Below are positions 16,048 through 32,859 of a stretch of 64,000 bases of DNA, piece by piece; position 1 is the first letter of the stretch, and the number at the start of each line of letters is the position of its first letter. A program made the translations under genes and the position numbers. The notes under the pieces are model-generated. The model did not search any database, was not told the origin of the DNA, and worked only from the letters and a program-made list of their open reading frames with translations. This stretch comes from Chlorokybus atmophyticus (taxonomy: Eukaryota > Plantae > Mesostigma and Chlorokybus algae), in the NCBI GenBank assembly GCA_009103225.1, contig RHPI01000733.1, positions 40,523-104,522 of the forward strand. Reading direction: 5' to 3'.

Positions 16048-16464
16048 CACATTGTCACCCTTTTTGCTCAAGTGAGTGCGTTGCATTCTGCATCAGATAG
16101 TGCAGTCTGTATTTGGGGACACATCCCTGTGCATTTGTTATCACTGTCATTACATAGTGCACACAAGCACTAGTGTGGTGAGTGGTAGCGGCATCGAGAC
16201 TGACAGTAGAGCACAAACACTCTACCCTGCATACACTTTCACCTGTGGACTAGCTATATGAGCAAGCCCACCCCGTTCTCTCCAATAGACGAGGGTGACC
16301 TCAGCAGCTTAAGCCCAACCTCCAATCTCACCTACGAGTGAACCAGCAACGGGAGCAGCGATTGTAGCAGCAGAGGCTCGCGTTCTGTCTCCGACTTTAC
16401 TCCGTTCTTATTTACTCCTCGGCATCGGGTTTCCCCACTCTAGTCCGACAGTGACGACTACAAA

Positions 16465-18216
16465 ATGGAGTCTTTCATCTCAACCACGTCCCTGCGCTTT
16501 TTCGGACGTGCTGGCACTACCTCGCTGGACGAATTTATCATTAAATTCTACTCCAATATGCGACAGTAGGCTCTGAAGAACAAAGACTGGTCGAAGGAGA
16601 TTTCTTTTCACATTGCTACTCGGTGTCTGGACCATGAAGCACATGATGTCTGGAAGTCTGTTGCTGAACTGCATCGAGTTGATGGCTATGGCGAGCTCGC
16701 CATTATCATAGCATCTGCGTCACTGCATAGTCCAGTAGCCGTCTTTCCACCTGCTACTCTCGCTGCAGTCACCGGGTTGTCCATAGCGGCAGCCATTGAC
16801 AGAGCAGAGGAGGAGTAATCTAAGTTGGTGATCATCAACCTGACCCCTGCAGAAATTGAGTTCAAGATGGCCGCACAACGGGCCCGGATCCCAGACCGTT
16901 CTGCTGCCATCCTTGAAGAATAACGAACTGCCGTTGAGGTGGGCACACCCCTGCCTTTGGCAACACCCGGCTTTCATGCGAGAGGCAGTGCTTTCACCCT
17001 CAGGTCAGTCGCACTGCGCGCAGTAGCTATCCTTGTAGGTGCTGCCATCTCTGACCCTCCCCTGAAAGATCTATACGCTGCACTTCGTCGCACCTTCCCA
17101 CCGCAGACCACTAGCAAAGTGGAGGAGTTGAGGCGGTTCCGACGCAAGCCCAACGAGGACCCTCTACGCCTGTACTCCGGACTGGAAGGGCTGTTAAAGG
17201 ACACTGACTACAAGATCTTTAATGATGAGGCTGCTGCAGTGGTATATGTCAATGAGTTGAATGCCACCCTGAGCGAGTCGACGCGCCAGACCCTGAACTA
17301 CAGCAGGCTCTTTGGCTACACGCTCAAAGAAGCTTTTGAGACTGCACAAGCCATCCAAGCGCTTGGTGTATGAGAAGGTAGTGCTGGACCAACCCCAGCG
17401 CCTCGCGGTTTGCAGCCAGCACAACTGTTGAGCCTCCTCGCCGCGAACATGGCCGGACGCTCCACCAGCAGGCGACAAAGGGAAACAGTCAGCGCATACT
17501 GCTTTGCCTGCCCCTATAGCCATGCTCTTCCTTGCGAGCGTTGGCGTAGTTGTTGGTGTTGTTATGGCCTCCGGTATGGTTGCTGTTGTAGCCACCAAAG
17601 TTGTTGCCGTTGTGGCCTTCAGTGTTGTTGCTGTTGTAGCCACCAAAGTTGTTGCCGTTGTAGCTGTTGGCGGGTCTCAACTCAGGGAACTTGAGCCAGC
17701 AAACTAACTCCAAATGGCCTCATGGCGCGTATGGCGCGCTTGAAGGAAGACAAGGAGCAGGACTACCGCGCCTGCTACTCTGCCCGATGGGCATTGATGA
17801 CTCCGAAGCACACGAGAGACACCGGCACTCCGTCACGTATTCAACCATCCCGACGAGTTCGAGGGGAAGCCGCAACATCGTCAGCAGCTACCTCCACTTA
17901 AGCCACCAGTGGTGCTGCACCAGCAGCAACAGTTACACCAGCTATGACGTCAACTCCGTCAACATCAGCAACTACTCTAGTTGCACCACAATTTGGTACA
18001 TCGTAAGCATCGTGACGCCAACACTGATGCGCACGCTGGCAACAGCCACTGCTGTCACCAACCCTGCGGTCGTAAGTCGCACAGGTCCCGCTCCAACTTC
18101 AAGACCACCTGTGTCAGCGAGCGTTGAGACCACTCTCGCGCCACTGAGCGGCACTCTCGCCACCACCGGCAATGCCATCGTGGAGCCCGCTGCCACTGCA
18201 GCGACCCGCGCAGCTA
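16465..18216 (+). pseudogene. Retrotransposon gag, 5' part
   Basis: ATG 16465 is in frame with ORF 16939-17373 (LRRTFPPQTTSKVEELRRFRRKPNEDP, gag-like). In-frame stops at 16567, 16816, 16921 and 17371. Interrupted at the TA at 18215-18216. Confidence 0.65.
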
Positions 18217-18769
18217 CGTCGCAAATTTTACATGGTGACTGACTAAGGACTGAGGGACTTATTGGTGCCTGAGCCTGCCTGTTGCTGCCTGAAATATTAC
18301 TTTTGGACTATTGGGTTTGCCGTTGGCTTAAGTGGACTGACGCAGACGGCCGCGGGCCGAAAGTGGTTGTCAGTGGCACTAACCGGCCGAGAGTTGTCAA
18401 CCAGTTACCCTTTGGTCGATGTGCACAGACGGCCGTTGACCGCTAGTTACGGACAGCTGACAGCAATAGCCGGCAATTTCTTTGCCGTTACACTGCTGTT
18501 AATATGTGACCCTTGCCATTTGACAAAAGTTGGCAATTCTTGCCGTAAGCCAACACTAACATGCCATGCAGCTTGTACAAACCTTGGACTGATTGTTTGG
18601 TCTTGCACCTAAAAGCCCACAATATATACAATGTACGGGCAGTGGTGAGAGTATGTCCACTTACAACTGAGCAGCCGACTTGCGCATGAAACTATCCTAT
18701 AACATTGAGTCTAGCTGTCGGACTCATGCGCAGCTTGTCAACCCGTGGTGCCTGCCTCAGAACTCCTCC

Positions 18770-19630
18770 TCAAACCCCCTCCTCCTGTTCCTCCTCCGAC
18801 GAGTCTTCTGCTTCAACGCCAGAGTCATCCACTGCCTCGCTCGCTGACAGTACAGCGGCTACTTCGTCCTTCAGCTTGAATGTCAGCGCCTCGCCGTGCA
18901 CGCGCATGCGCTTGATGGTCGCTTTGAGAGTGACCACCTGCATTTGGTAATGCTGTAAGAGTGGCGTGCTGCCAGAGGACTAGCCCATCAGCATACACAC
19001 GCTTACCTCGTCTTCCGCTTTGTTGCACTCCGCCAGGCAGACAGTCAGCCTGCCGCGCTGCTCTTGGTTCACTCTGACCAACATGGCAATCTGCAAGCAT
19101 ACTGCTTAATTACCGCTGGAAACATTAAACTAGGTCATAGATTACCCGTTCGTTTGACTCCGCAGCTTCTCTTTTGCGACTTGTGAGCTCCCGCAAGTAG
19201 AAATAGGCTGTGCATTTGCGAGATTGGTCATGCTGTTCATGTGCATGACACTGGAGGTTGTGCATGAGGGTGTGCATGTCGTATTGACAATGTATGTCAA
19301 GTGCAAGATACTTGAGGCTGTGCATGTGCAAGATAAAAGAACCCTAGCATGTGGCATTGACAGTGCATCGTAACCCACCTTGGTTATGCCAGTCTTGTTT
19401 GGTCCCTTCAATCATGTCGCCGTGGTCGCAGCTGCTGGTGGGTCGGATTTTCTTAGAGGCAGTATTGTGGTGTGCCTTTGCCCACTCGGAGGGGGAGCCC
19501 TGTAAGATATCGCCCGAGTCACTGTTGTCATTGGATGTGCCCTTGGTAGTCTTGGTGGGGTTTGACACCGAGGACACCCCTCCGGCACCCTGCCCGCCCT
19601 GTGCGAACATGGAATTCATCCTGGACCTCG
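18770..19630 (-). CDS. Transposon cargo ORF-A, multi-exon, unknown function, acidic tail
   Basis: Phase-0 spliced exons ending at 19146, 19090-19007 (IAMLVRVNQEQRGRLTVCLAECNKAEDE) and 18937-18770 (VVTLKATIKRMRVHGEALTFKLKDE...DSSEEEQEEGV*). The 5' end is unresolved. Confidence 0.45.
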
Positions 19631-20041
19631 ACCACAATGCCCACTATGCCCCTGGCAGCTCCGTCAACGATCTTCCAAACGCCACATACCCTCGGCATCA
19701 CGCCCCTGTAAGGGCATAGCTTGGCGGAGCTATCAATGGTGTTTTCATGCGCAGGGGGACTGACATTGCCAGAGTTGTCAATGGTACGAACTGCCATTGC
19801 CATTGTACAAAGGTACCATTTCAATGGTACCTTTGTATAATGCCTATACCTTGGGGCAAAGGCATCTTCGTACCATTGAAACGGTTCAATCAGAATATAT
19901 ATGTATATATATATATATCCAGACTCACCCTGGACGTTCAATGGCTCGATCGTACTATTATAATGGTGCGACGGAGCCAGTGACTGGCGGCCAAGTTTCC
20001 CGCCTCTGGCATGCAAGGGTAGCGGTAGCGGTGGCGGTGGC

Positions 20042-20073
<32 letters not shown>

Positions 20074-20140
20074 GTGTGCGTGTTGCTGGATATGATGCAG
20101 GTTACATTGGCGACACCTGTGTCGACGTTAGTAGTGAGAT

Positions 20141-23100
20141 ATGGGAGTCCTTTGTCCGTATTGCCACATGCGCTTCGCCACACGCAGCTCGGTCTACATG
20201 CACATTATTAGCAGCAGGGTGTGCAAGCAGATCAAGCTGTATGTCGGCCAGCGTCCATTACAGTACGATGCGGGTCATGTTGAACCGGGGAGTTCGATCC
20301 AGGATGCTCACATGCTTGTTGCTGAAGGATTCCTCCAGAAGACACACAGCAGCAACAGGAGGAGGAGGAAGTGAACGAGGGCTTTCGATGTGTGCGTGTG
20401 CCTGAGAAACCTGTGGCACGCCAACATGGAAGTGGAGGCGTCCCTTCGCAAGCGTCGGAATCCAGGTGGTATGGCTCGGAGCATGCTCTTGCAGTGGCAT
20501 TCGTGCAGTGCAACAACGGCCAAGGCCTGTCGGCCTCCGACATGGGGCGGATCATCAAGTGCATCCGAAATGCACACTTCCTGACGGAAGAGCTCCAGTN
20601 CCTAACGGAAGAGCTCCAGTGGGAGACCGGTGTGCATGCTGCCAACTACCTCCGGACCACGATCGCTTTCTCTCAGTTTGAGGTGTGTTCACGGTGTGCG
20701 GTGCATGTGCTTCAACCATCAGAGCCATGTCACATATGCACATGCGAGTGTGCTGCCGTATCAGAACTACGTGACGGCTGACCTGCGCAAGCCTGGAGAC
20801 CCTGAGGATCAGGACATCTGCGTCACATATATGCCGGCCAAGGTCTGTGAAATGCAGTACCTAATGCAGTATCGATGCAGTATCTATTCTGAGGCCAGCA
20901 TAGTAAGTAATGCTCTTGGTCGGAGCAGGTATGGCTCGCGCGGTTGTATGGCAATCCACATGCCGCCAATGGCTTCAATCTCCAGTACACTGGTGACGAG
21001 CACAGCTTTGGCCATCCTTCCACGGGCGATTGGTGGAAGGATGTGGAGGTGCATTTGAGGAGAGAGGTGGGGGAAGCGTCCTACTTGGCGCCTGCCATTC
21101 TGTACAGTGACAAGACCACGCTGGACAGCGCGGGCAAGCGCTCTGGCTACCCTCTGATGGCATCGCTTGCCAACTACAGTTGGGACATGTATGCTAGCAA
21201 CATGAGGGTTGTTATGATAGCGCTTCTGCCGGTGGTTCACGCAGTGGCCGGGCATCCCACCTGGGCGCAGGGCAAGGAATCGTTCTCCCTTCGAAAACGT
21301 GAGATTTTTCATGACGCTTTGAATATAGTGTTAGGGGATGTGAAGCGGGCGAGTTGGGAAGGTCTGCAGCTCATCGACCCAAATGGCATCGAGCGTCGTG
21401 TGTTTCTCGCGCTTGCCAACTACATCAGCGATTTGCAGGTAGTGGGCATGAATGGTTGTAACCGGATGCAGCCTGCCAGCAAATAGTGCATGGAGGATGT
21501 TGTCAGTAGAACATCTGAGTTTGTCGTGTTTTAGGAGACTGCCACACTTGCACGCACTGTGTCGGGCAACCAAACACGACATCCTTGCGATGTTTGTCTC
21601 GTCACCAAATCAGATCTGTTGTAGACGGATGAGGACTGGGAATTGAGAACCGAGGCCTTCTACACACCAGCACTACGTCAGCTGCGGGCGGACCTGCATA
21701 GCGGTGTTAGGAATGCACGCCAGCCAGCCAAGGCTTTTAAAGAGCAGCACTCCATGCATGTCGAGGAGGTAATGGTCAAATTACCGGCATTCGTGAGGAT
21801 GAATGGCTTTCCGTGAAACCAGGCAATGTGGTTTGGCAACAGAATGCACTGTGGGGTTGGCGACAGTCGCGGGTGCCGGGAGCTGACTGCTACTCTCGTC
21901 TTGCCCCTGACGCAATGCATGTGCTGGGAGGCATCATTGACCACCTGCTTGCTGCTGTGCAAGACGCCGCAAAGGAACGAATGCGTCCATCCACGAGACA
22001 AATTCTGCAGGCCAGGCACGTCTTTTGTGTTGCTTTTGTGTTGAACACTCAAGCCAACAACACGTGCTCACGAGCAGATGTGCACAGGCTGAATGCATGC
22101 AAGGCGACTCTGCGGGTTTCGCACTGCAAGGCACCCACAAGCACAGTAGATATCTTCCTGTCCGACCACTCCTTTCAGATGGTGGAGAAAGTGGCGGTGC
22201 TGCAGCTGCTGCCGGTCCTCGCAGACGGTTTGCTGCTCGACAGTGAGGGCAACGATTTCTTCACCATTGCTGCCGCATCGCTTGCCCAGTGGAACAAGAA
22301 GTTGCTGAAGGCGCATGAACACACAAGAGAGACCCTGACCACAGCCGACAACGAGCTGGCTGCCTTCAAAGCTGCAGTGTTGCATCCGCTACTGTCGTCA
22401 TATTCTGCACAGAAGTCAGGTTGGAAGATTGAGAAGATGCATCAGCTCACTCATTTTGGGCCGGCAATTGTCAGCAGTGGACACCCAGATTGGTTCAGCG
22501 CCAACCGCATGGAGCAGACGCACGCTCAAAATATTAAACGGTGGGCGCGTGGTGGCAACAACCGGGACTACCAGGCACGTATCTTGAAGGCATGGAGCTT
22601 TGCGGAATATGTGAGAGAGGATGGCATGGTCGTGGATCCCGAGATGCGCTCGGTCATGGCACAGGCGCGGCAGCAGTGCTGTAATGTCATGGAGAAGACG
22701 GACAAGTTGCTACAGATGGATGTGCTGACAAAGAGGGAGTCCAGCCCGTACTGGGACGGATCTGCGCGTAGCCGCCAAGTCGCCTTGAAGACTCCATTTG
22801 CCGACAAGCTGCCTGCCACCCTGAACAGGTGGTTGAGGAGGGAACAACTGGAGTTGGCCGACGGGTGGCGTGCTGTTCGCGTGGTGAACGGAGGCGCAGC
22901 GGTGTACATGACATTAGGAGTCAGCATGGCGCGCGCAACTGGGATGTTCCATGGGCGGCCTTGGTTCTCTACACTTGAGTTGGAAGGTGATGAGGACGGT
23001 GTGAACGTGACGTGGTGGGCTCAGGCACTCCTTTTTCTGCGCGTGGTGGTGTGGGGTGGTAGCGGCGAGCGCGTGTGGAAGGAGGTCGTGTTTGTCCGCT

Positions 23101-23300
23101 GGTACACGAAGCTGGATGTGACGAGCGACACAAAGTGCATCGCTCTGGAATGGGAAAAGCGTCGAGGCGGTCCACATCTCGATGTCGTGACTCTGGAGCA
23201 AGTAAAAGGCATTGTCCAGCTGCTCCCCATGTTTGACAAGGACAGCGCCCGTGTACAAGAGGGCAAGTATTGGATGAACGTTCATCGCACTTCCACGTGA
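20141..23300 (+). pseudogene. Plavaka-family transposase (N-terminal C2H2-like finger), disrupted
   Basis: Motifs PSTGDWWK, ILYSDKT, GYPLMASLAN, FHDALNIVL, LANYISDLQE, PCDVCLV, PDAMHVLGG, KMHQLTHF...G...SANRMEQTH, ARATGMFHGRPWF, VFVRWY. Exons 20141-20682, 20765-20842, 20929-21438, 21535-21768, 21843-23300. Frameshift near 20340 and TAG at 21622-21624. Confidence 0.85.
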
Positions 23301-23503
23301 CACATGTACTTGTCTCGCTACTCTGAGTTTGGAGCATATCAGTCAGTTAGGCATTGCTAATCGTATGCTAAGACTTTTGCATGTGGACGTGTACAATACC
23401 GGGCAGCTGTCACTGCACAACTGTCACCACAATCGAATGATCCATGCAACATTCAACAATCAGTCCGCCGTGTGGCATTAAGCATCAATACAGTGCACCA
23501 CAC

Positions 23504-25228
23504 TCAAGCCTCATAGTTCCATGACACAGGAGGGTAGTCACAGCGCATATCCATTGTTTCAAGCATGAGACGCCCTATGCACTCCGCCATTGCGGGAGGA
23601 ACTGCATTCGCTATGGAAACGGCCGAGGTCATCCATGGCACTCCCAGCGCTGTTTGCCACGCAGCAATGCCGCCCCTGGTGCTTGGAAGGCCATAGACCG
23701 GGTACATCTGCTGTGGCGCGTTTGATGTCACGATTGTCTTCTTCGCGCTAGCGGACAGGTGCGGCGATAGTAGTCCAACTGCCTTGCCCGCGTGCGAGAA
23801 GCGTGCTGGTGGGGTAGCTACCATTGGCTATGTCTCAAACAGACGGTGTCGGAAAGTTGATAGGCCAAACATTGTGCCATAAAGGGACAGATTGGGTCTG
23901 AATGAGGAAGCTGCTCCTGGCACATTCTCAATCACAAACTTGCCCTGGCTTGCAAGTAGCAGACGTCGGACGAGCGGTATCATATCTTGGTGTCTCCAGG
24001 ATGTGCCATGTGCCGCCCGTTGAGGTGCCGGGATAGCACCTGAATAGGCCTGGCATGGTGGACTGGCCCAGATGAGCTCGTACTCGCTCAGCTCTCCTGC
24101 ACTCAGGGTGCATCGCGGTGTATGAATGGCAGCGGGTACTCAGAAGAGGGACTTATGTCCATCCCGGTCACGTCAAAGCCTGCGTAGTATAGACCGACAC
24201 TGGCACCGCCACCGCCGCAGAATAGGTCGAGTGCCCTTGGTCTGCGTGTGCGTCCCAGCTTGTTGTCAAATGGCGTGTATGTGGTCAAGGCTGGCCGTGG
24301 TGCTGGCCAGGGACTAACAATGATGCCGTCCGGGCTTACTTTGCGACTGACGTTCTCCCCTCCGGCGCGCAGAACATGGCGTGCCCCGTCAACTGATGTG
24401 TACGCGAATACGTTGTGCCCTTGAAAGTTTTTGGTTTGTGGTCGATCACCGTCATTGAATACTATACGGTGCTGCCCTGCAAAGACATTTTCCATTGCAC
24501 CATGCATATATGATGCGTCCTCAATCTCGCACGCCACGAAGCGATGCTGACCTGACGCTTGCTTGAATGATTCCACAACGCCCGCATACCATTCCCCATC
24601 CAGCGGCCAATGCACCATGACACTCACACCGATCAGCTGCTCGCATCCCAACTTAACTGCGTTCCGCAGCCGATGCAGTGCGCTGTCCAACGGTCGATGG
24701 TCTGCCTCCTCTACAGCGGCCAGGGGATGGAACTGCCCACGCCCACACCGTGCAAGACTGCTCTGAATGCGACAACAGCTTCAACATGCATGAAATAAGC
24801 ATACGCCCAACATAACATGCAGTGATACGTCGCGGTCCACTCTTGTGGATTACCTCCACAGCATCCACCACCTGTCCACTAACCACATGTCCCGGTGTTG
24901 TCCATGTGAAGAAGCGCATGGGTTCCCCTCGCCACTCGAAGCATGAGCGCGAGCACGATTCGCACACGCACTGCACGCAATGGAAAAACTCGGGTTCCTT
25001 GCACAGCACTTGGCCGAGGCGGCAGCCAAACACGTCGACATTGTGTGTGGTGTGATGCCAGCAAGCAGCACTAAAACCGTGGCACACTGTCTGCACTCGC
25101 TGGCATTCGGTCAAGTGTGCTCGCATTTGCTGCCTACGGCCATTGGCACATACGTACGCATTGCATTGTGGGCACACCAAGCATGGTCTCCTAGGTGAGG
25201 GTGATTCAACTGCTGCCGCCGACATCAT
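23504..25228 (-). pseudogene. Cys-rich / Tudor / C5-cytosine DNA methyltransferase fusion (about 520 aa when repaired)
   Basis: Exons 25228-24854, 24762-24552 and 24476-23504 splice in frame. Tudor-like LIGVSVMVHWPLDGEWYAGVVESFKQASGQHRIVFNDGD. MTase motifs: I RALDLFCGGGG, IV IWASPPCQAYS (24050-24061), VI FVIENVPG (23921-23929), VIII GTMFGL..RHRLFE, X IANAVPPAMAECIG. One frameshift at about 24105-24112 and a TAG at 23828-23830. Confidence 0.85.
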
Positions 25229-25800
25229 GCAAAATAGGAATCGGCACGGCTGCCCACAAACTGAGCGAGACTTTAGGGTATGGGCATCAATTTAGGGTTG
25301 CCAGCTTACGAACCCTAAATGGGTCAAACTTCAAGTGAAGCACGACTGTACCTTATACGCTATTGCAGTACCATGCATGGTACTACATCAACATGAATGG
25401 TACTCNTACAGTACAAGGATACTCGCAGGCACGATCGTGGAGTAATACTGTGCTGTTATGCCATGGAACCCAAAGCGCTGTCCGAGTTTGTTGCTGTCAA
25501 CCACGCTTTAAACCAGCGAGGTATGCAAGCCATGCACTGACTCATGCGCCGGGCAGTCATCATACACATGTACAGCCAATGCTTCTAAAACAGCAGATAT
25601 CTGGTGCACCATGCACCATGCTGCAACTATACATGTACCTACATGGTTCACAGGAAGCCAACACAAAACTACAATACATGCACAATTGGCATCAAGGCGG
25701 GGGCCAAATCACCGCCGACACGTTGGCGTCTTGCATCAGGCGTGGCGACCAAAACGGGTGAGGTTGCTTGCAGAATGGACACGCTTGTAGATTCTTTGAT

Positions 25801-26727
25801 TTATTTGCCACAGTCTTCTGATGTGCTATGATGCAGACATGGCACATCGCTTTCTTGCAACAGGGTGTCTCCCCATCCGCTGGGGGGGGGTGGCTCTTCG
25901 ATGCGACAAATTAGCACACATGGTGCACGCGGGTGTGCAAGCTGCCTCTGCCACCAAACTCTCTTATTGCGTCGCAGGCGTAGCGACTCCCATCTGAATG
26001 GCGCAGCATAACGCTCCACTGCCTGCACGATCACCTGACGCCCATCTGCCGCCATACACCACCTGCTGGTCTTGGTGGTCTCGTCTAGCATGCGTTCATC
26101 CAGGCCCTTGACATGGCTGTCGTCACTCGTGTACTCCCCCGCATCGTCATTTTCTTCGAGCTTCCACAGAATCAGCTCGACGTGCCGTATGACATACAGC
26201 CACTGCCAGCCAAAGCATGCCAAGTACAGCTCGAATGGTTTTACTTGCCACCCAGTATGTTTGCTCAGGTAGTGGCACACATCTCGACCCGCATTAGTCG
26301 ACATCGACAGGTACATCTGCTGCAGCAGGTCGAAGTTCTGCTCCGCAGATAGCTCTTGCACATTGCCGGGGTGCTGCGTCAGCAACAACACCATCATATC
26401 GAGGACGGCGAGGGGCAACAACGTACTACGGATGGCCATTTCGTGTATGGGTTCCAACCACGGCCAATCCCCAGAAGTCTGTTTAGACCGCATTCTCCGC
26501 GTTTGCTCCCACTTATTGCAAACTTTCGTCACCCACCTCGAGGCATGCCGCATGCGGTGATGCAGCGCGTCTTGGGCGTACTGTAGGGTGATCAACTCCT
26601 TTGCACTACGAGTTAGCCCCCCAAAGCGTCTGCGCGTCGGTGCTTTGAGCTTAGGCAGCTCGTGCCGCACCGGCTGTCTCTCTGGACGATGCTGAGCAGC
26701 CACTAGCCTTTGGCCGTGACGTGGCAA
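25801..26727 (-). CDS. Transposon cargo ORF-B, unknown function (up to 308 aa)
   Basis: Long open non-repetitive ORF with protein-like composition; no family recognised; start uncertain. Confidence 0.5.
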   Translation of the reverse strand: MPRHGQRLVAAQHRPERQPVRHELPKLKAPTRRRFGGLTRSAKELITLQYAQDALHHRMRHASRWVTKVCNKWEQTRRMRSKQTSGDWPWLEPIHEMAIRSTLLPLAVLDMMVLLLTQHPGNVQELSAEQNFDLLQQMYLSMSTNAGRDVCHYLSKHTGWQVKPFELYLACFGWQWLYVIRHVELILWKLEENDDAGEYTSDDSHVKGLDERMLDETTKTSRWCMAADGRQVIVQAVERYAAPFRWESLRLRRNKRVWWQRQLAHPRAPCVLICRIEEPPPPSGWGDTLLQESDVPCLHHSTSEDCGK

Positions 26728-26740
26728 CCTCGGCCGTCAG

Positions 26741-28011
26741 CAACCCTTCCCCAAGCAAGTGGAAGATTGGCAACGAGGTAAGCACTGTGTGACACTGTGA
26801 CACTGTGTGTATGTGTGTAACGGATTGTTCTTCTGTCAAATCATAAATGGCCACTGGGTAGAGAGCCACATTTATCCCAAGGAGGACACTATTCGTAACG
26901 TCATGTGTCAGGTGCTGTGAATGCTTCATGACCGCACTGCACCGTGACACTGACCAACCTGCCCGTGACAGGTAGTTGGCTTCGACCATGACGACGAGGC
27001 CGATGCGGCCAAGTTCTATGAGGTGTACTGGACTCCCAAGGAGTGCCCCTTCCACTGGAGTGTCGCCCTGAAGAAAGCTACGCAGGTCCGGTCTGAGAAC
27101 GCTACCAAGATCAAGCATGTCCTTGAGAAGGAGTACAAGTGGACACTGTTTAACAGCAACAAGCGCAAGTGAGTTGGGTCCCTCACCACCATGTCTGCTA
27201 TGCAACACCGCCTTCTTACTTAGCCTCCATACACACGTACTCATCTCGCCTATTGTAACCGATTCAATCAGGCACATCGATGCCCTAATGGACCCCGAGA
27301 CCCAAAAAGCCCAGATGCGCAACGCGCTCCAAAGTAAGTCACATGCACTATTCTAGCCTGGTGCAGGCTCAACTTGAACTATCTATTTCGTGACTAATGC
27401 CTTGTCGGTATGACTGTCGCAGACAAGTCATGGCGGAGATTTGAGGTGACCGACACTGCAGACCCGGAGCGGAGGAGATACATCCATGAATGGGGCAATC
27501 CCATAATCTGGCAAATGATCGTGCAATGCTGGTCTTACGCCGTCACTACACCTGGTCGCCGGCAGCTGACAGTCAACCACCTCGCACACCTGTTGCTTAC
27601 GGTGAGCACTCTGAACTCCATCATTAGCAATTCAGGAATGCTGTAGCCCCAAACTTCAGGCTTGCATACGCGTTGCAGTGAATAGTGGCTTTCGATGCCA
27701 CTAAGACATGCCTGTAAACTGCGCAGGTGGAGCGCATCCTAAAGGGCAAGGATGGAGACCCTCTCCTAGCTGCCAGCATAAACACACATGAAGAGTACCT
27801 CAGCGAAATCAACACCATGATCATGTCAATGAAGCGGGAGATGAGGCAACGGTACGCAGCCCTCCAGCCATTCACCCTTGTGAAACGCCGCACTGCATCT
27901 TGTGTCGAATACCTGAAAGAGTCCAATCGGCGCCGGCCGCAAGAGAAAGCAGCTCGTGACCCGCTCGCTGAGGCAGAAGCGGCATTTGATTGGCTGGCAC
28001 AACCGTTTTAG
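26741..28011 (+). CDS. Transposon cargo ORF-C, multi-exon, unknown function
   Basis: Phase-consistent GT-AG exons ..-26777, 26862-26911, 26972-27168, 27272-27333, 27423-27601 and 27727-28011 give an open protein (ESHIYPKEDTIRNVMCQVVGFDHDDEADAAKFYEVYW...EWGNPIIWQMIVQCW...AFDWLAQPF*). The 5' end is unresolved. Confidence 0.6.
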
Positions 28012-28494
28012 GAGGAAGAGCAAGCTCCGGCGTCTCCTCCACAGGCCCCAGCGCGTGGTGCTTTGTTTCGTAATGACGAGACCAGCGATGATGGAGAGGA
28101 GCTGTAGCGCAGTTGGTAGTCCGTTTATCTGGTAGTGTACATAGCTACAAGGCTCTTGTGACTGAGTGTTGTGCATCTTAAACCAGCTCAGTCAATCGTC
28201 ATTATGCTCATGCACATCAATACTTGCATCCCTATGATATACAACAGAACTGCATTCGAGTCACATAATCGACCTACAAGCCTTGGCAAGTGACTGAGAG
28301 ACACTGTACACATTTCAGGTACATGTACACAGCACAGGCACATAGCAATGCTGGACGTCAGTGACAGTCGCGTGTAGTCAAGCTATGCAAATACATATGA
28401 CGACAGTTAGGCATTGGTCACCTTCAGTTGTTAAAGAATGCCTTATTTTGTCGATAATTACCTAGTTGGTGCTTGTGAATTAGGCTTAGTCGCC

Positions 28495-28790
28495 TGCGCT
28501 GGACTGGTGTGTAACCTGCAGGTGCCTGTCACATAGGCTGAGTCACCTAAGTAAGACTGATGTGTAGCTTACAGGTGCCCGTTGGTTAGTTGTAGTCACC
28601 TAATAAGGCCTGATGTGTAACTAACAGTTGCCTGTAAATTACATAAAGTCATTTGTTAAGGCCTGGTGTGTGACTAACAGGTGCCTGTTAATTATATAAA
28701 GTCACCTGTTAAGGCCTGATAGGTAACTATCAGGCGCCTGTTAGTTAGGCATAGTCAACTGTTAAAGACTAGATTGTAACAAAAAAGGCC
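28495..28790 (+). repeat. Subterminal tandem array, 53-bp period, about 5.5 diverged copies
   Basis: CAGGTGCC-like core recurs at 28519, 28572, 28625, 28678 and 28731. Confidence 0.85.
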
Positions 28791-28930
28791 TTACAGTAAC
28801 GAAAGTTACTATTAGGTCCCTGTATCAAGATTACAGGTGGCCTGAGCCACGACAGTCTCAATTAGCGTCCTCAGGTGCACGGCCGTTGCCAATATTTAGT
28901 CGGCCGGCAGGGAAAACATATTGCGACGTA

Positions 28931-31470
28931 CATTGCCCGCCCTCGACGTCATTCAAGCTGTCCCGCGAGATTAGCAAGCTGAGCGCGCATGGGAGACCAT
29001 CATGCGTGGAGTAGATCCCACTACCATTGCTGTTGGGCGCGTAAGAGAGCGCACAATACGCGTTGAACGCAGTGACCGAGTCTTTCCTCTACCTGAATAT
29101 CACACCCTGCCAAAACAGACTCAGCGGCAACTGGAGGCTGAAATCCTCGCCGGCACGGCGCCTCCCATGCGAGACCGCGTCTGTATGGTCAGAACACCTA
29201 TTGTACTGAAGTTTGCACTACAGCTGTTCTGAACTCTACATAACAACATACAGACTGCGCCACGCCAGCCCGCATCAGTCCGCCATGAACCTTTTTAGTC
29301 GAGCTCGCCGGACACGTATTGGGACCGGCAACCAAACGCACAGCAGCACATCGCTGATACAGCCAACATGCCTATCGGTGACAATGAAGCACTACGACCC
29401 CTCAGTACCGTTCGGCTTCATGAGCGATACACCGCTCTAGAACAGGCGTTCACCTGGCGACAGGACCAAGCGGCAGCAAGTAATGCAAGATCGCAAGCCC
29501 TTGCCGATGCTCGCGCTGGTGTTCTTTAGTCAATAGACGCTGGCCCATCATTCAGCACGACACCTCTCGTCGGTGAGCCCGACATTGACCAGGCGCGGGC
29601 GCGGGCCTAGCAAACCAGGGGTTTTACCGCCCCGCTGCTACCCGCCTTGTTGGAAGACTTGCCTACCGATCAACGGGATCTAGGGAGAGGCTACTCCACA
29701 CCACAAGGGTGTACACGACGGGATGGAGCAGGCTCAATTGGAGAATAGCAACTTCGCACAGCCCTGTTGCGACAAGCAACCATGCTACATCGATAAGAAG
29801 GCATCGGCCAGAGACGGATGATGGGGATGCGAGAAGGTGGCAATGCAGCTCGAGCAAGACTAGTGACTTGGCTAGTCACCACTCACCCCGCAGTGCCTCT
29901 GTTCGCCTTCGCTACCAGGTTGTTATGGTTGAACGCCTTTTTTCGCTCGCTACGGCAAGCCTATGACGAGGTTGCCTCGGCAGCCACTGACACCTGAGAA
30001 GGAGCTTAAGAGGCCATACTGAGGTTGCCCGGGGTGGAAGCAGCGCAGTAACGCAGACGCATCGCAGCTGCTTATGAGCAGCATGTCCGACAGCCAGAAA
30101 TTAACCTCACTGTGCGGGCACGAGCAACAACGGTGCTAGAAGTGGGGGTGATCAATGGCAGATGGGATGCCTACATTGTAGGGATCCTAAGGGTTCCCAC
30201 CATCACCCATGACATAAGAGCGCGGCTTCTGCGCGCAGTGTATCTCCAACCCATGCCTCAGAATCACCGCTGAAGTGATGTGGTCAATAATCCAACATCC
30301 ACATGGGAAGGTACACTGGTCAGGGATGCAGCTCATGCGGTACGCTGGACTTATGTGGAAAAACAGGCTGCACGAGAGGCGGGCCCACCAACACCCGGTC
30401 CTCCAGGGTTTCCGCAACAGCCGCTGGCTATGCCGCCAGGTATGACCCCGGCCACACAGAGGCGCAATCCCCCTGCGCCACAACCAGGGCAACCACAGGC
30501 AGCACCGCCAGCACCCAGGCCGCAGCGCATATACCAACAGCCAACACAAGGACGGTTCGGGCCAGGCCGCGGTCAAGGAGGTTGTCAAGACCCAGCTGAT
30601 CGAGGGGCGCTTGCCGCACTGCGCTCGACACCATTGGAGGAGACTGCAGCAGCAGTCACCCCACGCACACGCTACCGACGATTCAGGCGGCTGCGCATCC
30701 ACGCCAATGCAGCCATAATCGCCAACCAAGGCAAGCATGTCACTATCAATGGACGAGCACCCAAGCGTGTGATGCTGGACTCTGGAGCTGAGCCTGTCAT
30801 CATCGGACATTACCTCGCACGTGACCTTGGCAGCATGGCACCAGCGCTGAGCTGATGCCATGCTCATACGTGCTCGACACAACAACCGGCAGCCGTGACA
30901 AGGTGATTGGCATCACCAAGCAAGCCCTCTGTATTCGCTTGATTGGGGTGGACCCTTCCCACAGCACCGAGGTCATACAGAAGTGTGTGGTCACCGATGC
31001 AAGATCCATTGACCTGTTGCTGGGACAGGACTTCAACTTCCCTGATGGCATGGGGCTGTACTGAGAAGGCATGGTTTCGTCCTCATTAAGATGAGGAGGA
31101 TGGAGAGGTTCAAGGATATCTGCCTCTCGAGCTGGTGGCTCGCACTCGCTCTCACCGAAGGTCAGCTGCAACAGCCATCTACAGGTCGATGTCGACAACC
31201 ACTGATAGGTCAGCTGCAACAGCCACCCACAGGTGGGTTTCAACAGCCACTAACAGATCAGTTGCGGTGGTCACCCACAACTCGGACCAAGACTCTCCAA
31301 TCCCATACGACGAATCTCAGAAAGATGCCACTGAAGACGTGGCCCACCAGAAACCAGCGGAACGCCGCTGGTGCGCACAGGTGGTCGCACATCTACTATT
31401 GATCAGACTACGGCTCACTTCACGGTTCCCTCTCTACAGGGACCAAGCTGCGGTCCAGGAGCAACACCAG
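28931..31470 (+). pseudogene. Retrotransposon gag 3' part and aspartic protease, degraded
   Basis: Continues the gag frame after the insertion. GKHVTINGRAPKRVMLDSGAEPVIIG and VTDARSIDLLLGQDF are retropepsin-like. Confidence 0.7.
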
Positions 31471-31909
31471 CACACGGATTGACGTTCAAGGACCATGAAT
31501 GGTCGGTGACGCAGGACCGGGATTTCCCCCTGCTAAATGAAATCGGGGGGCCTTGCATGGTCTGTTTTTCATCGACAGTCGGACCATTCATGGTCCGAAT
31601 TTCACGTGAATGGTACCATTGTCCCTTGGTACGCACCACTTAAGGTCCGGCCGATTACTGTTGCGTCAGGACCAGATATGGTCCGGCCATCGGACCAGGG
31701 ACTAAATCATATCATTACAAAACTTCAATCATAACTGGTCCGGCCAGCGGACCATGGACCGAAATTTATTATGGACCAATGTAAATATGAGTGCAAATGC
31801 AGTAAAAGTTGACACATCTTTGTCGGCGGCACCGGCCACGCCCAACCTGCGGCGCACGAGGCCGCGGCCAGCTCCGCGGCGTTAGTGGAATGATTAGTCA
31901 AGAACACAC

Positions 31910-31981
31910 GCATCGGCCGGATTCGAACCCAGCGCCTTTAGCATATCAAAGACGACGCCCTAACCACTAAGCTACAAGTGC
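31910..31981 (-). ncRNA. tRNA-derived sequence (A and B boxes), not a canonical tRNA
   Basis: Minus strand TAGCTTAGTGGTTAGGGCG...GGTTCGAATCC; the anticodon stem does not pair. Confidence 0.4.
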
Positions 31982-32859
31982 ACGTACCGGTAGGGTCGCA
32001 TGGCAACCTACATCATGTAATTTATTGCATGCGCCGACAGCCGCTTGGCGACTGTCGGCCGGCGGCAGTAATTGCCGATGGACAGTCGGAGATTGTGTGT
32101 CGCTTTGATAGGCCCACAGGCTGAGCCTATGCAATTGTAGCATTTATAGGCTGTACCAGTTACATGGACGGTGGTAAACTACATACCGGTAGCCGCGAAC
32201 TCGGCGGTTGTCAATACGCCAGTACAATTTGTAGACTTGTTAGGGGCTGTCATTGTGACAATGCTTAGTGATAGTAGCCAAATTGCGACTGTCAATGCAG
32301 CCAGTGTACCTTATCGGGCTGTCGATGATTCTGTGGTCGCATGAGGCTTTTATAGGCCATTTATGAGGTTATACAAGTAAGGCTATAAGTCATAACATCT
32401 GACATTGCTTGCGCTTTCGTTTCATACACAGTATTAAAACCAATCATACCATAAACTACGCCTAGCAATGCAACATGCGAACAGCATCAACATATGTATT
32501 CATGGTATGATGTTAACGGTTGTGAACATTATGATAATGTAATAACCAACGAACTATATGAAATGCAATTAACACGCGCAATGCATGGATGTAAATTTGA
32601 TATAGTTATTATTTTAGACTATGTAATTGTACAGTAATCATAACACTTTGTACAATCATATTTTTATACATTATTTAAGATGTATATAATTTTACATATG
32701 AAAGGTCTAATGCACATGTGTACGCGCATCAATATACTTACAACAATGTATGTACATGAAATGATAGATATGAAGTAATTGCACGGATGCAAATTGCGGC
32801 CGCAATACGTCAACAATTTTTGCTTGTATACCTTAAGCCTATTCCTACATGCACACACA

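What the first reader, a model, noticed from the sequence alone, without database searches (positions are those of the whole stretch)
23504..24250. The transposon MTase is compact and looks bacterial/phage-derived, not DNMT1/3/CMT-like
Seen: about 245 aa, with motif I followed by GFDVTGMDISP...YPLPFIHRDA, then GTMFGL.TFRHRLFE and a short variable region ending ALGVPWMT...IANAVPPAMAECIG. From recall this matches small orphan C5-MTases of actinobacterial phages/prophages rather than eukaryotic families, and it is clearly unlike the gypsy-borne DNMT 10 kb away. Inference: independent horizontal acquisition followed by fusion to a eukaryotic reader and gain of introns upstream of the catalytic domain.
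Basis: inference. Interest (0 to 1): 0.7.

Follow-up and report, generated by a model that had tools for sequence, protein, structure and literature searches.

The report
Virus-type DNA methylase in algal transposon
A broken gene next to a Plavaka transposase encodes a small cytosine DNA methyltransferase of the phage and giant-virus kind, fused to a plant-type Tudor chromatin-reader domain, so this mobile block picked up a methylase separately from the DNMT3 carried by the gypsy retrotransposon 10 kb away.

Summary
On the minus strand, 24250-23504 encodes about 249 codons of a C5 cytosine methyltransferase with motifs I, IV (PCQ), VI (ENV), VIII (RHR) and X (ANAVPP). This copy is therefore a pseudogene, or the assembly is wrong there.

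It belongs to a very large family of 205-250 aa phage, prophage and bacterial methylases (35-47% identity over about 90% of the length; phrog_363 E=9e-24). It has no specific affinity to DNMT1, DNMT3, DNMT2 or M.HhaI, and no detectable similarity to the neighbouring gypsy methylase, which is DNMT3-like.

Actinophages are not its nearest relatives. It groups with giant-virus methylases and three unplaced metagenomic proteins (bootstrap 55-88%, exclusive motifs, best viral fold match a Pithovirus methylase).

Upstream, in the same exon, is a Tudor-like domain with plant and green-algal homologues, interrupted by a 75-nt intron. The gene lies tail-to-tail with a Plavaka transposase, in a roughly 12.6-kb block that interrupts a KnitGypsy-Dnmt3-like retrotransposon. 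Transposon ends were not found.

Verdict: real, a new variant of a known kind (transposon-borne or orphan DNMT gained by lateral transfer).

The parts
23504..24250 (-). Compact C5 cytosine methyltransferase domain (about 249 codons) with motifs I, IV, VI, VIII and X. It is intron-free but broken in this copy.
   Evidence: AlphaFold2 model has pLDDT 89.2. Foldseek returns only C5-MTases.
24104..24109 (-). Frameshift inside the methylase, between RDA(P) and LSAGE. It is a 1-nt deletion in a C run or a 2-nt insertion.
   Evidence: Three-frame translation and alignment to homologues. There is no GT..AG at the site.
23828..23830 (-). In-frame TAG stop directly after motif VIII (RHRLFET*).
   Evidence: Homologues read through this position.
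24445..24636 (-). Tudor-like (Royal family) reader domain, LIGVSVMVHWPLDGEWYAGVVESFKQAS|GQHRIVFNDGD. Its second half lies in the same exon and frame as the methylase.
   Evidence: PF21743 E=5.6e-4 after splicing. phmmer against 1.84 billion representatives gives 247 hits, best 1.9e-31. The named hits are plant and green-algal Tudor or bromodomain proteins carrying PF21743.
24477..24551 (-). Candidate 75-nt in-frame intron (CAG|GTCAGC...TTTGCAG|G) that splits the Tudor domain.
   Evidence: Removing it raises the summed phmmer score against 34 Tudor homologues from 1428 to 2567 bits. Unspliced alignments stop at the donor site. The Pfam Tudor hit appears only after removal.
24763..24853 (-). Candidate 91-nt intron (GAG|GTAATC...ATTCAG|AGC) that joins the Cys-rich upstream exon (frame 0) to the Tudor exon (frame 1).
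   Evidence: Read from the sequence only. This is inference, with no homology or RNA support.
24854..25228 (-). Candidate first exon. It starts with ATG and is Cys/His-rich (CLVCPQC...H....C; FHCVQCVCESCSRSC).
   Evidence: No Pfam hit. This is inference.
20944..23300 (+). Plavaka-type (CACTA/EnSpm-related) transposase gene. The Pfam-matching core is 20944-21486 and a 495-aa ORF spans 21813-23300. It is convergent with the methylase gene, with 203 bases between the two stop codons.
   Evidence: PF18759 E=2e-21. The 495-aa ORF has no Pfam hit and no homologue at E<=1e-5.
17600..30270 (.). Approximate extent of the block that interrupts the gypsy element between gag and protease. It contains the Plavaka transposase and the Tudor-methylase gene. 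Its ends are not defined.
   Evidence: A gag-like ORF with a zinc-knuckle-like motif runs to about 17.56 kb, and an ORF leading into the DSGA protease motif starts at 30274. No terminal inverted repeats or target-site duplication were found.
15448..39397 (+). Host gypsy retrotransposon that carries its own DNMT3-like methylase. Its parts are repeat B (15448-16047), gag-like region, protease (about 30.75 kb), DNMT3-like region (about 33.6-35.2 kb), RT, RNase H, integrase (35.3-38.2 kb) and repeats A-B-A (38343-39397).
   Evidence: The layout matches KnitGypsy-Dnmt3 as described in PMC5890265.

Best explanation
The locus is a decayed copy of a eukaryotic gene built from three parts. The first is a candidate Cys-rich N-terminal exon. 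The second is a Tudor-like histone-reader domain of the plant/green-algal PTM/DIR17 type. The third is a minimal C5 cytosine DNA methyltransferase.

The catalytic domain belongs to the large family of 205-250 aa orphan methylases of phages, prophages and bacteria. Within that family it sits on the branch found in giant viruses of eukaryotes. It was therefore acquired laterally, most likely through a giant virus or a shared eukaryote-associated ancestor. This acquisition was independent of the host-derived DNMT3 in the neighbouring gypsy element.

The gene lies tail-to-tail with a Plavaka transposase, inside a block of about 12.6 kb that interrupts a gypsy retrotransposon. It most likely arrived there as transposon cargo.

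Inferred mechanism when intact: the Tudor domain docks the enzyme on modified histone tails. The methylase, whose target-recognition region is very short, then methylates cytosines de novo at a short sequence context. It uses the standard Cys (PCQ) / Glu (ENV) / Arg (RHR) chemistry with S-adenosylmethionine. This could mark the element's own DNA or the surrounding chromatin.

In this copy a frameshift and a stop codon make the product non-functional.

Shown: family membership, fold, motifs, lesions, the in-frame Tudor fusion, one intron, and the adjacent Plavaka transposase. Inferred: the giant-virus route, cargo status, the upstream exon, and all biochemical activity and biological role.
For: Family:
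- 4585 homologues. The best 120 are mostly 205-250 aa proteins, 37-48% identical by BLASTP, most over 85-95% of the query; identity in the MAFFT alignments is 35-49%.
- 329 phage records match.
- At least 536 bacterial loci across many phyla and 498 IMG/VR loci match.
- phrog_363 gives E=8.8e-24.

Not a canonical DNMT:
- phmmer of the protein against the PDB gives no C5-MTase hit.
- The family profile against the PDB reaches only 1e-7 to 1e-4 for a prophage MTase, DNMT2, HaeIII and HhaI. DNMT1 matches at motif I only, and DNMT3 is not among the 60 matches shown.
- Foldseek finds the C5-MTase fold but at TM 0.4-0.6 and 12-20% identity to all families alike.

The gypsy DNMT is different:
- It matches DNMT3A at 1.5e-8.
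- BLASTP against the window methylase gives E=0.18.

Giant-virus branch:
- The motifs 'IIPxxxR..W' after motif IV and 'QMYPVYG' occur only in WINDOW, P0001-3 and members of the long giant-virus-type group, out of 236 non-redundant sequences; that 9-sequence group also has the longest IV-VI spacing, 44-48 against mostly 37-41 (up to 47) elsewhere.
- A neighbour-joining tree gives a clade of 17 with bootstrap 55% (Kimura) and 88.5% (Scoredist).
- Five of the 13 long members were checked for context. Their contigs carry RNA polymerase Rpb1 with an intein plus PolB, an mRNA capping enzyme, a cap N7-methyltransferase, SET, RING, kinases and a rhodopsin.
- The best viral fold match is a Pithovirus LCPAC201 methylase: E=5e-19, 34% identity, nine orders of magnitude better than the next match.

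Reader, intron and context:
- Reader and intron.
- Plavaka transposase.
- Nesting in the gypsy element.
- Base composition is like the neighbouring transposon genes.
Against: - The tree is neighbour-joining only, and its support depends on the distance measure (55% against 88%).
- The window protein lacks the 40-110 aa insert in the variable region that P0001-3 and all giant-virus members have. It could therefore branch at the base of that clade, or have lost the insert.
- The three closest proteins (P0001-3) come from contigs of unknown origin.
- No other giant-virus gene is present in the window.
- No transposon termini, target-site duplication or second copy were found.
- No closer relative exists in any collection searched. 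Cargo status and former activity therefore rest on a single degraded locus.
- The Pfam Tudor score is below the gathering threshold (20.1 against 27.2).
- Canonical DNMT families were compared only through PDB entries, not in a joint tree.
- ChloroDNMTs and the six Klebsormidium 'orphan' DNMTs listed in PMC12344493 could not be obtained for comparison.
Confidence: 0.7

Rival explanations
1. A compact methylase passed straight from an (actino)bacteriophage, prophage or bacterium into the alga or its transposon, with no giant-virus intermediate.
For: The family is overwhelmingly bacterial and phage. The window protein has the compact architecture: its VIII-to-X spacing of 83 lies within the bacterial range of 50-119 (mostly 60-89), and it lacks the giant-virus insert. 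Some compact metagenomic proteins are as close by raw distance as the giant-virus ones.
Against: The exclusive shared motifs and the NJ clade with the giant-virus group argue against it, as does the Pithovirus methylase being by far the best viral fold match. The five actinophage and Paenibacillus phage sequences in the tree are not among the nearest neighbours.
Confidence: 0.2
2. The Tudor-methylase gene is, or was, a host 'orphan DNMT' gene rather than transposon cargo. On this view it sits beside the Plavaka transposase only because of transposon pile-up and rearrangement.
For: The gene has introns and a plant-type reader domain. No terminal repeats or target-site duplication tie it to the transposase. 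Orphan DNMTs gained by lateral transfer are reported in many eukaryotes, including six in Klebsormidium nitens (PMC12344493).
Against: It lies inside a block that splits a gypsy element between gag and protease, which calls for insertion by a mobile element. It is 203 bases from the transposase stop codon. It is a pseudogene, as expected for a decaying transposon copy.
Confidence: 0.2
3. The methylase is what remains of an integrated giant-virus genome, later overrun by transposons.
For: The nearest relatives are giant-virus methylases. Endogenised giant-virus DNMTs are known in Amoebidium and Acanthamoeba (PMC11244446, PMC12344493).
Against: Apart from the methylase, ORFs from eight relative-bearing contigs (six giant-virus-like, two of unknown origin) gave only four weak chance-level matches to the window. 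The domain is fused in frame to an intron-bearing Tudor exon. Its composition equals that of the neighbouring transposon genes.
Confidence: 0.07
4. The methylase sequence is bacterial or phage contamination, or was joined to algal DNA by misassembly.
For: The window contains N runs and one perfect 264-bp duplicate next to an N. No identical protein is on record anywhere.
Against: There is a continuous open frame from the Tudor domain into motif I, with no gap. Eukaryotic transposon genes lie on both sides within 300 bp. GC and GC3 match the neighbours. The nearest N is 1.1 kb away, at 25406.
Confidence: 0.03

Closest known systems
Compact orphan C5-MTases of phages and prophages (PHROG phrog_363; for example Mycobacterium phage Pukovnik gp82, Gordonia phage Yakult gp45)
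   Same: Alignable over the full length at 35-43% identity, with a similar catalytic-domain length (about 249 codons against 205-250 aa) and the same motif set. This includes RHRLFE in place of the classical QxRxR and a very short target-recognition region.
   Different: The window gene is in a eukaryotic transposon context, fused to a Tudor-like domain, with introns upstream. It has VPPAM instead of the family's IPPAY, and it carries the giant-virus-branch motifs and a 'DYPP' tail that phage members lack.
Giant-virus (NCLDV) C5-MTases of the same family (P0007/8/9/22/43, P0124-P0193; Pithovirus LCPAC201 A0A481Z4Z4)
   Same: Shared exclusive motifs (IIPxxxR..W, QMYPVYG), a longer IV-VI spacing, an NJ clade, and the best viral fold match.
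   Different: The viral proteins are 337-438 aa (642 aa for the Pithovirus match), with an insert of about 100 aa in the variable region and no Tudor domain. They sit among viral genes, and the window shares no other gene with them.
P0001-P0003, unplaced metagenomic proteins; two carry an MBD inside the methylase
   Same: They are the closest sequences found (40-49% identity by BLASTP, about 45% in the MAFFT alignment) and the only ones that share the C-terminal DYPP tail.
   Different: They have 40-110 aa inserts in the variable region. In P0002 and P0003 the insert contains a methyl-CpG-binding domain. Motif IV is PCF, QCH or PCL rather than PCQ. They have no Tudor domain, and their genomic origin is unknown.
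KnitGypsy-Dnmt3 and SymbioLINE/SymbioDIRS DNMTs (de Mendoza et al. 2018, PMC5890265)
   Same: The concept is the same: a transposable element carries its own cytosine methyltransferase. One such gypsy element is the host of this insertion.
   Different: Those are retrotransposons, with the DNMT inside the Pol or ORF1 polyprotein. The Klebsormidium ones are DNMT3-derived. Here the vehicle is a DNA-transposon block, the methylase is a separate intron-bearing gene, and the enzyme is of phage/giant-virus type.
TET/JBP-carrying Plavaka and KDZ DNA transposons of fungi (PMC12730594)
   Same: The transposase family (Plavaka) is the same, as is the theme of a DNA transposon linked to a 5mC-pathway enzyme.
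   Different: The cargo here is a 5mC writer, not an oxidase. The host is an alga rather than a basidiomycete. The published Plavaka termini (CATCA..TGATG or TGT..ACA, with a 2-3 bp duplication) were not found.
'Orphan' eukaryotic DNMTs gained by lateral transfer (PMC12344493)
   Same: It is a lineage-restricted DNMT outside DNMT1/2/3/5/6, with viral or bacterial affinities.
   Different: That paper describes orphans as generally lacking companion domains. This one has a Tudor-like reader and a transposase neighbour.

Membership tests
C5 cytosine DNA methyltransferase superfamily (PF00145) | Motif I FxGxG (AdoMet binding) | tested here: met
   LDLFCGGGGAS at about 24225. The residues are invariant in alignments A1 and A3.
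C5 cytosine DNA methyltransferase superfamily (PF00145) | Motif IV PCQ with the catalytic cysteine, and motif VI ENV | tested here: met
   SPPCQ (Cys codon 24055-24053) and FVIENV.
C5 cytosine DNA methyltransferase superfamily (PF00145) | Motif VIII RxR and motif X (G/A)N(A/S)VPP | tested here: met
   FRHRLFE and IANAVPP.
C5 cytosine DNA methyltransferase superfamily (PF00145) | Score above Pfam's gathering threshold | tested here: met
   25.6 bits against 22, E=1e-5. The match covers motifs I-VI only.
C5 cytosine DNA methyltransferase superfamily (PF00145) | C5-MTase fold | tested here: met
   AlphaFold2 model with pLDDT 89.2 and pTM 0.88. All 50 matches listed in the PDB fold search are C5-MTases.
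C5 cytosine DNA methyltransferase superfamily (PF00145) | Methyl transfer to cytosine C5 in DNA | not testable with these tools
   This needs expression of an intact copy. This copy has a frameshift and a stop codon.
Compact phage/prophage orphan C5-MTase family (phrog_363 type) | Full-length homology to members of 205-250 aa | tested here: met
   37-48% identity by BLASTP, most over 85-95% of the query. phrog_363 E=8.8e-24.
Compact phage/prophage orphan C5-MTase family (phrog_363 type) | Very short variable region (VIII-to-X spacing mostly 60-89 residues) | tested here: met
   83 residues.
Compact phage/prophage orphan C5-MTase family (phrog_363 type) | Encoded in a phage, prophage or bacterial genome | tested here: not met
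   It is embedded among eukaryotic transposon genes and fused to an intron-bearing Tudor exon.
Giant-virus branch of that family | Signature motifs IIPxxxR..W and QMYPVYG, and IV-VI spacing of 44-48 | tested here: met
   The motifs occur only in members of the 9-sequence group among 236 non-redundant sequences, and the group's IV-VI spacing of 44-48 is at the top of the family range. Clade bootstrap is 55-88%.
Giant-virus branch of that family | Insert of about 100 aa in the variable region | tested here: not met
   The window's spacing is 83, against about 170 in the viral members.
Giant-virus branch of that family | Giant-virus genomic context | tested here: not met
   Apart from the methylase, ORFs from the eight relative-bearing contigs gave only weak chance-level matches to the window.
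DNMT1/MET1/CMT, DNMT3/DRM, DNMT2 | Specific sequence similarity of the catalytic domain to the family | tested here: not met
   No PDB hit by phmmer. With the family profile, DNMT1 matches at motif I only, DNMT3 is not among the 60 matches shown, and DNMT2 reaches 1e-6 over the N-terminal half only.
DNMT1/MET1/CMT, DNMT3/DRM, DNMT2 | Family-typical accessory domains (RFTS/BAH, chromodomain within the catalytic domain, PWWP/ADD, UBA) | tested here: not met
   Pfam finds only a weak Tudor match upstream.
KnitGypsy-Dnmt3 (retrotransposon DNMT3) | DNMT3-type catalytic domain inside a gypsy Pol ORF | tested here: not met
   BLASTP against the gypsy DNMT gives E=0.18. The gypsy DNMT matches DNMT3A at 1.5e-8. 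The gene is on the opposite strand from the gypsy ORFs.
ChloroDNMT and Klebsormidium 'orphan' DNMTs (PMC12344493) | Phylogenetic grouping with those sequences | not tested
   The sequences were not obtainable here. No chlorophyte or charophyte protein appears among the listed best hits.
Plavaka DNA transposon (cargo gene) | Plavaka transposase present | tested here: met
   PF18759 E=2e-21 at 20944-21486.
Plavaka DNA transposon (cargo gene) | Terminal inverted repeats (CATCA..TGATG or TGT..ACA) and a 2-3 bp target-site duplication enclosing both genes | tested here: inconclusive
   No convincing pair was found. The element is degraded and only one copy is available.
Plavaka DNA transposon (cargo gene) | The same gene arrangement in several copies | not testable with these tools
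   The host genome is not available, and no close relatives were found in any collection.
Tudor / Royal-family reader (PF21743 PTM/DIR17-like) | Domain match and homology to Tudor proteins | tested here: met
   phmmer E=1.9e-31 to a six-repeat Papaver Tudor protein, with 247 hits in all. The Pfam score of 20.1 is below the gathering threshold of 27.2.
Tudor / Royal-family reader (PF21743 PTM/DIR17-like) | Binding of methylated histone tails | not testable with these tools
   Requires peptide-binding assays.

The most novel reading that the evidence does not exclude
A Plavaka-type DNA transposon family in a streptophyte alga carries, as its own cargo, a de novo cytosine methyltransferase of giant-virus/phage ancestry coupled to a chromatin reader. 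This would be the 5mC 'writer' counterpart of the TET/JBP 'eraser' genes carried by Plavaka and KDZ transposons in fungi. It would mean that CACTA-related transposons repeatedly capture enzymes of the 5mC pathway to manage their own epigenetic state. It would also mean that two unrelated transposon-borne methylases (this one and the gypsy DNMT3) coexist and may compete in one genome.
Probability: 0.3. Interest if true: 0.75.

Novelty: new variant of a known kind. Interest (0 to 1): 0.55.

Why it matters
Cytosine methyltransferases carried by transposable elements are so far documented mainly in retrotransposons, where they derive from host DNMT3 or from uncertain sources. DNA transposons are known to carry the opposing enzyme, TET/JBP.

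This locus adds a different combination: a DNA-transposon block, a methylase from the phage/giant-virus gene pool, and a plant-type histone reader. It lies 10 kb from, and nested inside, a retrotransposon that carries an unrelated DNMT3. If intact copies exist, three questions become testable:
- whether transposons use their own methylases to mark themselves or their competitors;
- how a minimal phage-type enzyme is re-targeted by fusion to a chromatin reader;
- whether giant viruses act as a conduit for bacterial DNA-modification enzymes into eukaryotic chromatin.

The relatives with an MBD inserted into the methylase point to a possible self-templating (maintenance-like) design that would be worth testing on its own.

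Tried and rejected
- Introns as the cause of the two frame breaks. Rejected: there are no GT..AG boundaries, and homologues align straight across both sites.
- The CACTG...CAGTG pair at 17012 and 30240 as CACTA-type termini. Rejected: it is the same 12-14-nt palindrome occurring twice, it lies inside a gag-like ORF, and it has no target-site duplication.
- Systematic searches for terminal repeats, including the published Plavaka termini. Nothing convincing was found.
- P0121 and P0122 as extra members of the closest subclade. Rejected: they score highly only because they are tandem double methylases in phages.
- Shared neighbours between the window and the contigs carrying P0001-3 or the giant-virus methylases. 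Only the methylase is shared, apart from weak chance-level matches.
- Search with the 495-aa transposase-adjacent ORF. No homologue at E<=1e-5, so it gave neither the host's identity nor further copies.
- Exact look-up of the aldo/keto reductase ORF to name the organism. Not on record.
- A metagenome scan for closer relatives. Nothing above 41% identity over most of the length (one partial match reached 50% over 138 residues), and the top hit L176 is an ordinary compact member.
- NCBIfam gave no hit for the window protein.
- Pfam gave no hit for the gypsy DNMT pieces, the gag-like ORFs, or the minus-strand ORFs at 25.8-27.3 kb.
- A link to the phage C5-MT/TET hypermodification clusters (bioRxiv 10.1101/2023.12.21.572611) was considered but could not be tested.
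Full report
**What is at the coordinates.** The feature lies on the minus strand. Reading from 24250 down to 23504 gives about 249 codons that carry the whole motif set of a C5 cytosine methyltransferase:
- LDLFCGGGGAS (motif I);
- IWASPPCQ (motif IV, catalytic Cys codon 24055-24053);
- FVIENV (motif VI);
- GTMFGLSTFRHRLFE (motif VIII);
- IANAVPPAMAECIG (motif X);
- stop codon TGA at 23506-23504.

There is a frameshift at 24109-24104, between ...FIHRDA and LSAGELSEYELIW, caused by a 1-nt loss in a C run or a 2-nt gain. There is also an in-frame TAG at 23830-23828, immediately after RHRLFET. Neither site has intron boundaries, and homologues align straight across both. This copy is therefore a pseudogene, unless the assembly is wrong at those two points. 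All positions that are invariant in the family are still intact, so the decay is recent relative to the age of the domain.

**Is it more than chance, and what family is it?** Pfam's general DNA_methylase model just passes its threshold (25.6 bits against 22, E=1e-5, motifs I-VI only). Specific comparisons are far stronger:
- The 5.8-billion-protein search returns 4585 proteins at E<=1e-3. The best 120 are nearly all 205-250 aa long, 37-48% identical, most of them over 85-95% of the query.
- The phage-protein library gives phrog_363 'DNA methyltransferase' at E=8.8e-24.
- tblastn against GenBank phages finds 329 records. These are 190 Mycobacterium, 52 Streptomyces, 28 Paenibacillus, 22 Arthrobacter and 19 Gordonia phages plus 18 others, at 32-40% identity and about 90% coverage. 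The genes are annotated as 'DNA methyltransferase' and are about 650-700 bases long.
- A scan of one genome per prokaryotic species finds at least 536 loci in Actinomycetota, Acidobacteriota, Chloroflexota, Proteobacteria, Verrucomicrobiota, Planctomycetota and others.
- IMG/VR adds 498 loci, many on contigs of 30-60 kb, a typical phage genome size.

The emphasis on actinobacteria mostly reflects which phages have been sequenced.

**Not a canonical eukaryotic DNMT, and not the gypsy DNMT.** Several tests agree:
- phmmer of the protein against all PDB chains finds no C5-MTase at E<=1.
- A profile of the family reaches only 1e-7 to 1e-4 against a prophage methylase (3g7u), DNMT2, M.HaeIII and M.HhaI, over the N-terminal half. 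It matches DNMT1 at motif I alone, and DNMT3 is not among the 60 matches shown.
- An AlphaFold2 model built on 87 aligned sequences is confident (pLDDT 89.2, pTM 0.88). Foldseek against the PDB returns only C5-MTases, which confirms the fold. The matches have TM-scores of 0.4-0.6 and 12-20% identity, with no preference among DNMT1, DNMT3, MET1, DNMT2, DIM-2 and bacterial enzymes.
- The methylase-like reading frames of the gypsy element at about 33.6-35.2 kb (FGGIGSG, GWECQEHS, YIIENV, ERERAMGF) match DNMT3A, 3B and 3C at 1.5e-8 to 3e-5. They give only E=0.18 in a direct BLASTP against the window methylase.

**Who the nearest relatives really are.** The three best hits (P0001-P0003; 344, 340 and 389 aa) share a C-terminal '...DYPP...' tail with the window protein. 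No other sequence has this tail. The next group is a set of longer proteins (337-438 aa) that carry an insert of about 100 aa in the variable region. Five of these were checked for genomic context:
- P0022: RNA polymerase Rpb1 with an intein, and PolB, on a 245-kb contig;
- P0043: mRNA capping enzyme, RING finger, kinase;
- P0009: SNF2, RING finger, kinase;
- P0142: SET domain, DUF7197;
- P0193: cap N7-methyltransferase, kinase, rhodopsin.

Each contig is densely packed with genes and carries genes typical of giant viruses.

Among 236 non-redundant family members, the motifs 'IIPxxxR....W' after motif IV and 'Q(M/F)(Y/F)PVYG' occur only in the window protein, P0001-3 and members of this viral group. 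That group also has the longest IV-to-VI spacing, 44-48 residues against mostly 37-41 elsewhere. Neighbour-joining trees of 252 sequences and 222 columns recover a 17-member clade: window + P0001-3 + 13 long viral-type proteins. Bootstrap support is 55% with Kimura distances and 88.5% with Scoredist. Window + P0001-3 has 35% and 66% (a smaller set is).

An independent library agrees. The best match in BFVD is the C5 methylase of Pithovirus LCPAC201 (E=5e-19, 34% identity, TM 0.70), nine orders of magnitude better than the next match.

The immediate affinity is therefore with methylases of giant viruses of eukaryotes, themselves a branch of the phage/bacterial compact family. Three caveats apply. 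The trees are distance-based. P0001-3 come from contigs of unknown origin. The window protein lacks the insert of the viral members: its VIII-to-X spacing is 83, against 117-196.

**The reader domain and the introns.** The open frame that contains motif I continues upstream without a stop to about 24840. It encodes LIGVSVMVHWPLDGEWYAGVVESFKQAS...IVFNDGD, which is the pattern of a Tudor/Royal-family domain. The pattern is interrupted by 25 codons bounded by CAG|GTCAGC and TTTGCAG|G (24551-24477, 75 nt). Three results support this stretch being an intron:
- With it removed, Pfam reports PTM/DIR17-like Tudor (PF21743, E=5.6e-4, 20.1 bits, below the 27.2 threshold). With it left in, there is no hit.
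- A full HMMER search of 1.84 billion representatives with the spliced 148-aa segment finds 247 proteins at E<=1e-3, the best at 1.9e-31. All align to residues about 40-83, usually several times per protein. The named ones are Tudor-domain proteins of Papaver and Tetracentron and bromodomain proteins of Chloropicon and Cymbomonas. They carry PF21743 repeats well above threshold.
- Removing the 75 nt raises the summed score against 34 of these homologues from 1428 to 2567 bits. Unspliced alignments end exactly at the donor site.

This is good evidence for a spliceosomal intron and for a reader domain of Viridiplantae type fused in the same exon as the methylase.

A second candidate intron (24853-24763, 91 nt, GAG|GTAATC...ATTCAG|AGC) would join a Cys/His-rich ATG-initiated exon (25228-24854) to the Tudor exon. 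This rests on the sequence alone. Whether the introns were 'gained' or came with captured host exons cannot be decided.

**Genomic setting.** On the plus strand, 20944-21486 matches the Plavaka transposase model (PF18759, E=2e-21). A 495-aa ORF follows at 21813-23300. It has no Pfam match and no homologue at E<=1e-5. Its stop codon is 203 bases from the methylase stop codon, so the two genes converge.

Around them lies a gypsy retrotransposon on the plus strand:
- a gag-like ORF with a zinc-knuckle-like motif, up to about 17.56 kb;
- a DSGA aspartic protease at about 30.75 kb (weak Pfam match);
- the DNMT3-like region;
- RT, RNase H and the integrase zinc finger at 35.7-37.4 kb;
- repeats in the order B (15448-16047) ... 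A-B-A (38343-39397).

That DIRS-like repeat layout combined with gypsy domains and a DNMT3 is what de Mendoza et al. describe for KnitGypsy-Dnmt3 of Klebsormidium nitens (PMC5890265). The host is therefore probably Klebsormidium or a relative. This is an inference: exact look-ups did not find the genome.

The block from about 17.6 to 30.3 kb interrupts the gypsy coding region. The simplest reading is a nested insertion of a Plavaka element that carried the Tudor-methylase gene. I could not find terminal inverted repeats or a target-site duplication, including the termini published for Plavaka in PMC12730594. No second copy exists in the window, and no close relative exists in any collection. 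GC and GC3 of the methylase match the neighbouring transposon genes, which argues against contamination or a very recent transfer. Apart from the methylase, ORFs from the eight relative-bearing contigs gave only weak chance-level matches to the window, which argues against a remnant of an integrated giant virus.

**How it most likely worked.** When intact, the product would be a chromatin-targeted de novo methylase. The Tudor-like domain would bind a modified histone tail. The minimal catalytic domain would flip out and methylate cytosine through the PCQ cysteine, the ENV glutamate and the RHR arginines. Its very short target-recognition region implies a short recognition context.

For a transposon, plausible uses are marking its own DNA or neighbouring chromatin, as proposed for retrotransposon DNMTs (PMC5890265). 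This would mirror the TET/JBP genes of fungal Plavaka and KDZ elements (PMC12730594). These functional steps are inference. Nothing here tests activity, specificity or histone binding, and this copy cannot make the protein.

**Comparison with what is known, and novelty.** Several things are already known:
- retrotransposon-borne DNMTs (PMC5890265);
- DNA transposons with TET/JBP (PMC12730594);
- giant-virus DNMTs and their endogenised copies (PMC11244446);
- 'orphan' eukaryotic DNMTs acquired laterally, described as generally lacking companion domains (PMC12344493). That paper lists six orphans and one ChloroDNMT for K. nitens, which I could not retrieve for comparison.

I did not find a description of a Plavaka-linked, Tudor-fused methylase of the phage/giant-virus family. 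I therefore rate it a new variant of a known kind. Interest is moderate, because it rests on one degraded locus and unresolved element boundaries.

**Verdict.** 'Bacterial/phage-type, not DNMT1/3/CMT, independent of the gypsy DNMT, fused to a eukaryotic reader with intron(s) upstream' stands. 'Actinophage-derived' should be replaced by 'giant-virus branch of a phage/bacterial family'. 'Transposon cargo' remains a positional inference.

Noticed in passing
window 15448-16047, 38343-39397 and 30.3-38.2 kb: A gypsy retrotransposon carries its own DNMT3-like domain and has a DIRS-like repeat layout (B ... A-B-A). This matches the published description of KnitGypsy-Dnmt3 of Klebsormidium nitens. It appears to be split by the roughly 12.6-kb Plavaka/methylase block and is full of stops and frameshifts.
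   Followed up: partly
window about 33950-34520 (+): The gypsy DNMT3-like region seems to contain an internal duplication. Peptide stretches such as STTKDLV/PLDHKRLG and RPQKT(W/S)CFYGRFVVI(S/L)MYLPVT recur in different frames about 500 bases apart, between motif IV and motif VI.
   Followed up: no
window 35488-35751 and 41853-42116: A 264-bp stretch of the gypsy RT region is repeated with 100% identity and ends exactly at a single N (42117). This looks like an assembly artefact at a gap edge.
   Followed up: no
P0002 residues 199-239 and P0003 residues 214-260 (loci L002 and the P0003 contig): Two of the three closest relatives have a methyl-CpG-binding domain (PF01429) inserted into the variable region of the methylase. 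A writer with a built-in 5mC reader suggests a self-templating, maintenance-like enzyme. Their motif IV is QCH or PCL rather than PCQ.
   Followed up: partly
L001:3-1439: The gene directly upstream of P0001 encodes a PLOD-like glycosyltransferase fused to a 2OG-Fe(II) oxygenase (phrog_61, E=3e-15). The arrangement is reminiscent of DNA-hypermodification clusters, or of giant-virus collagen-modifying enzymes.
   Followed up: no
P0121 (L173) and P0122 (L172): Phage contigs encode tandem fusions of two compact methylase domains in one protein of about 450 aa. One lies next to ThyX, the other in a contig with a terminase.
   Followed up: partly
window 21813-23300 (+): The 495-aa ORF that continues from the Plavaka transposase core has no Pfam match. 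It also has no homologue at E<=1e-5 among 5.8 billion proteins.
   Followed up: partly
window 25801-27322 (-): Two long overlapping minus-strand ORFs (308 and 223 aa) lie upstream of the Tudor-methylase gene and have no Pfam match. They could be further exons or another cargo gene of the block.
   Followed up: no
window 4637-5659 (+) and 63083-63985 (-): These are apparent host genes: an intact 340-aa aldo/keto reductase ORF (PF00248, E=1.5e-26, GC3 0.87) and a papain-family cysteine protease fragment (PF00112, E=2.5e-18).
   Followed up: partly
window 44098-46128 and 49322-50914: A further diverged repeat pair (68-80% identity) of unknown nature. There is also a 177-bp tandem-like repeat at 28501-28783 and a TA/CA-rich low-complexity tract at about 32.7-33.1 kb.
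   Followed up: no
window 17012-17027 and 30225-30240: The palindrome CACTGCGCGCAG(TG) occurs only at these two places in the window. They are 13.2 kb apart and roughly bracket the inserted block. There is no target-site duplication, and the left copy lies inside a gag-like ORF.
   Followed up: yes
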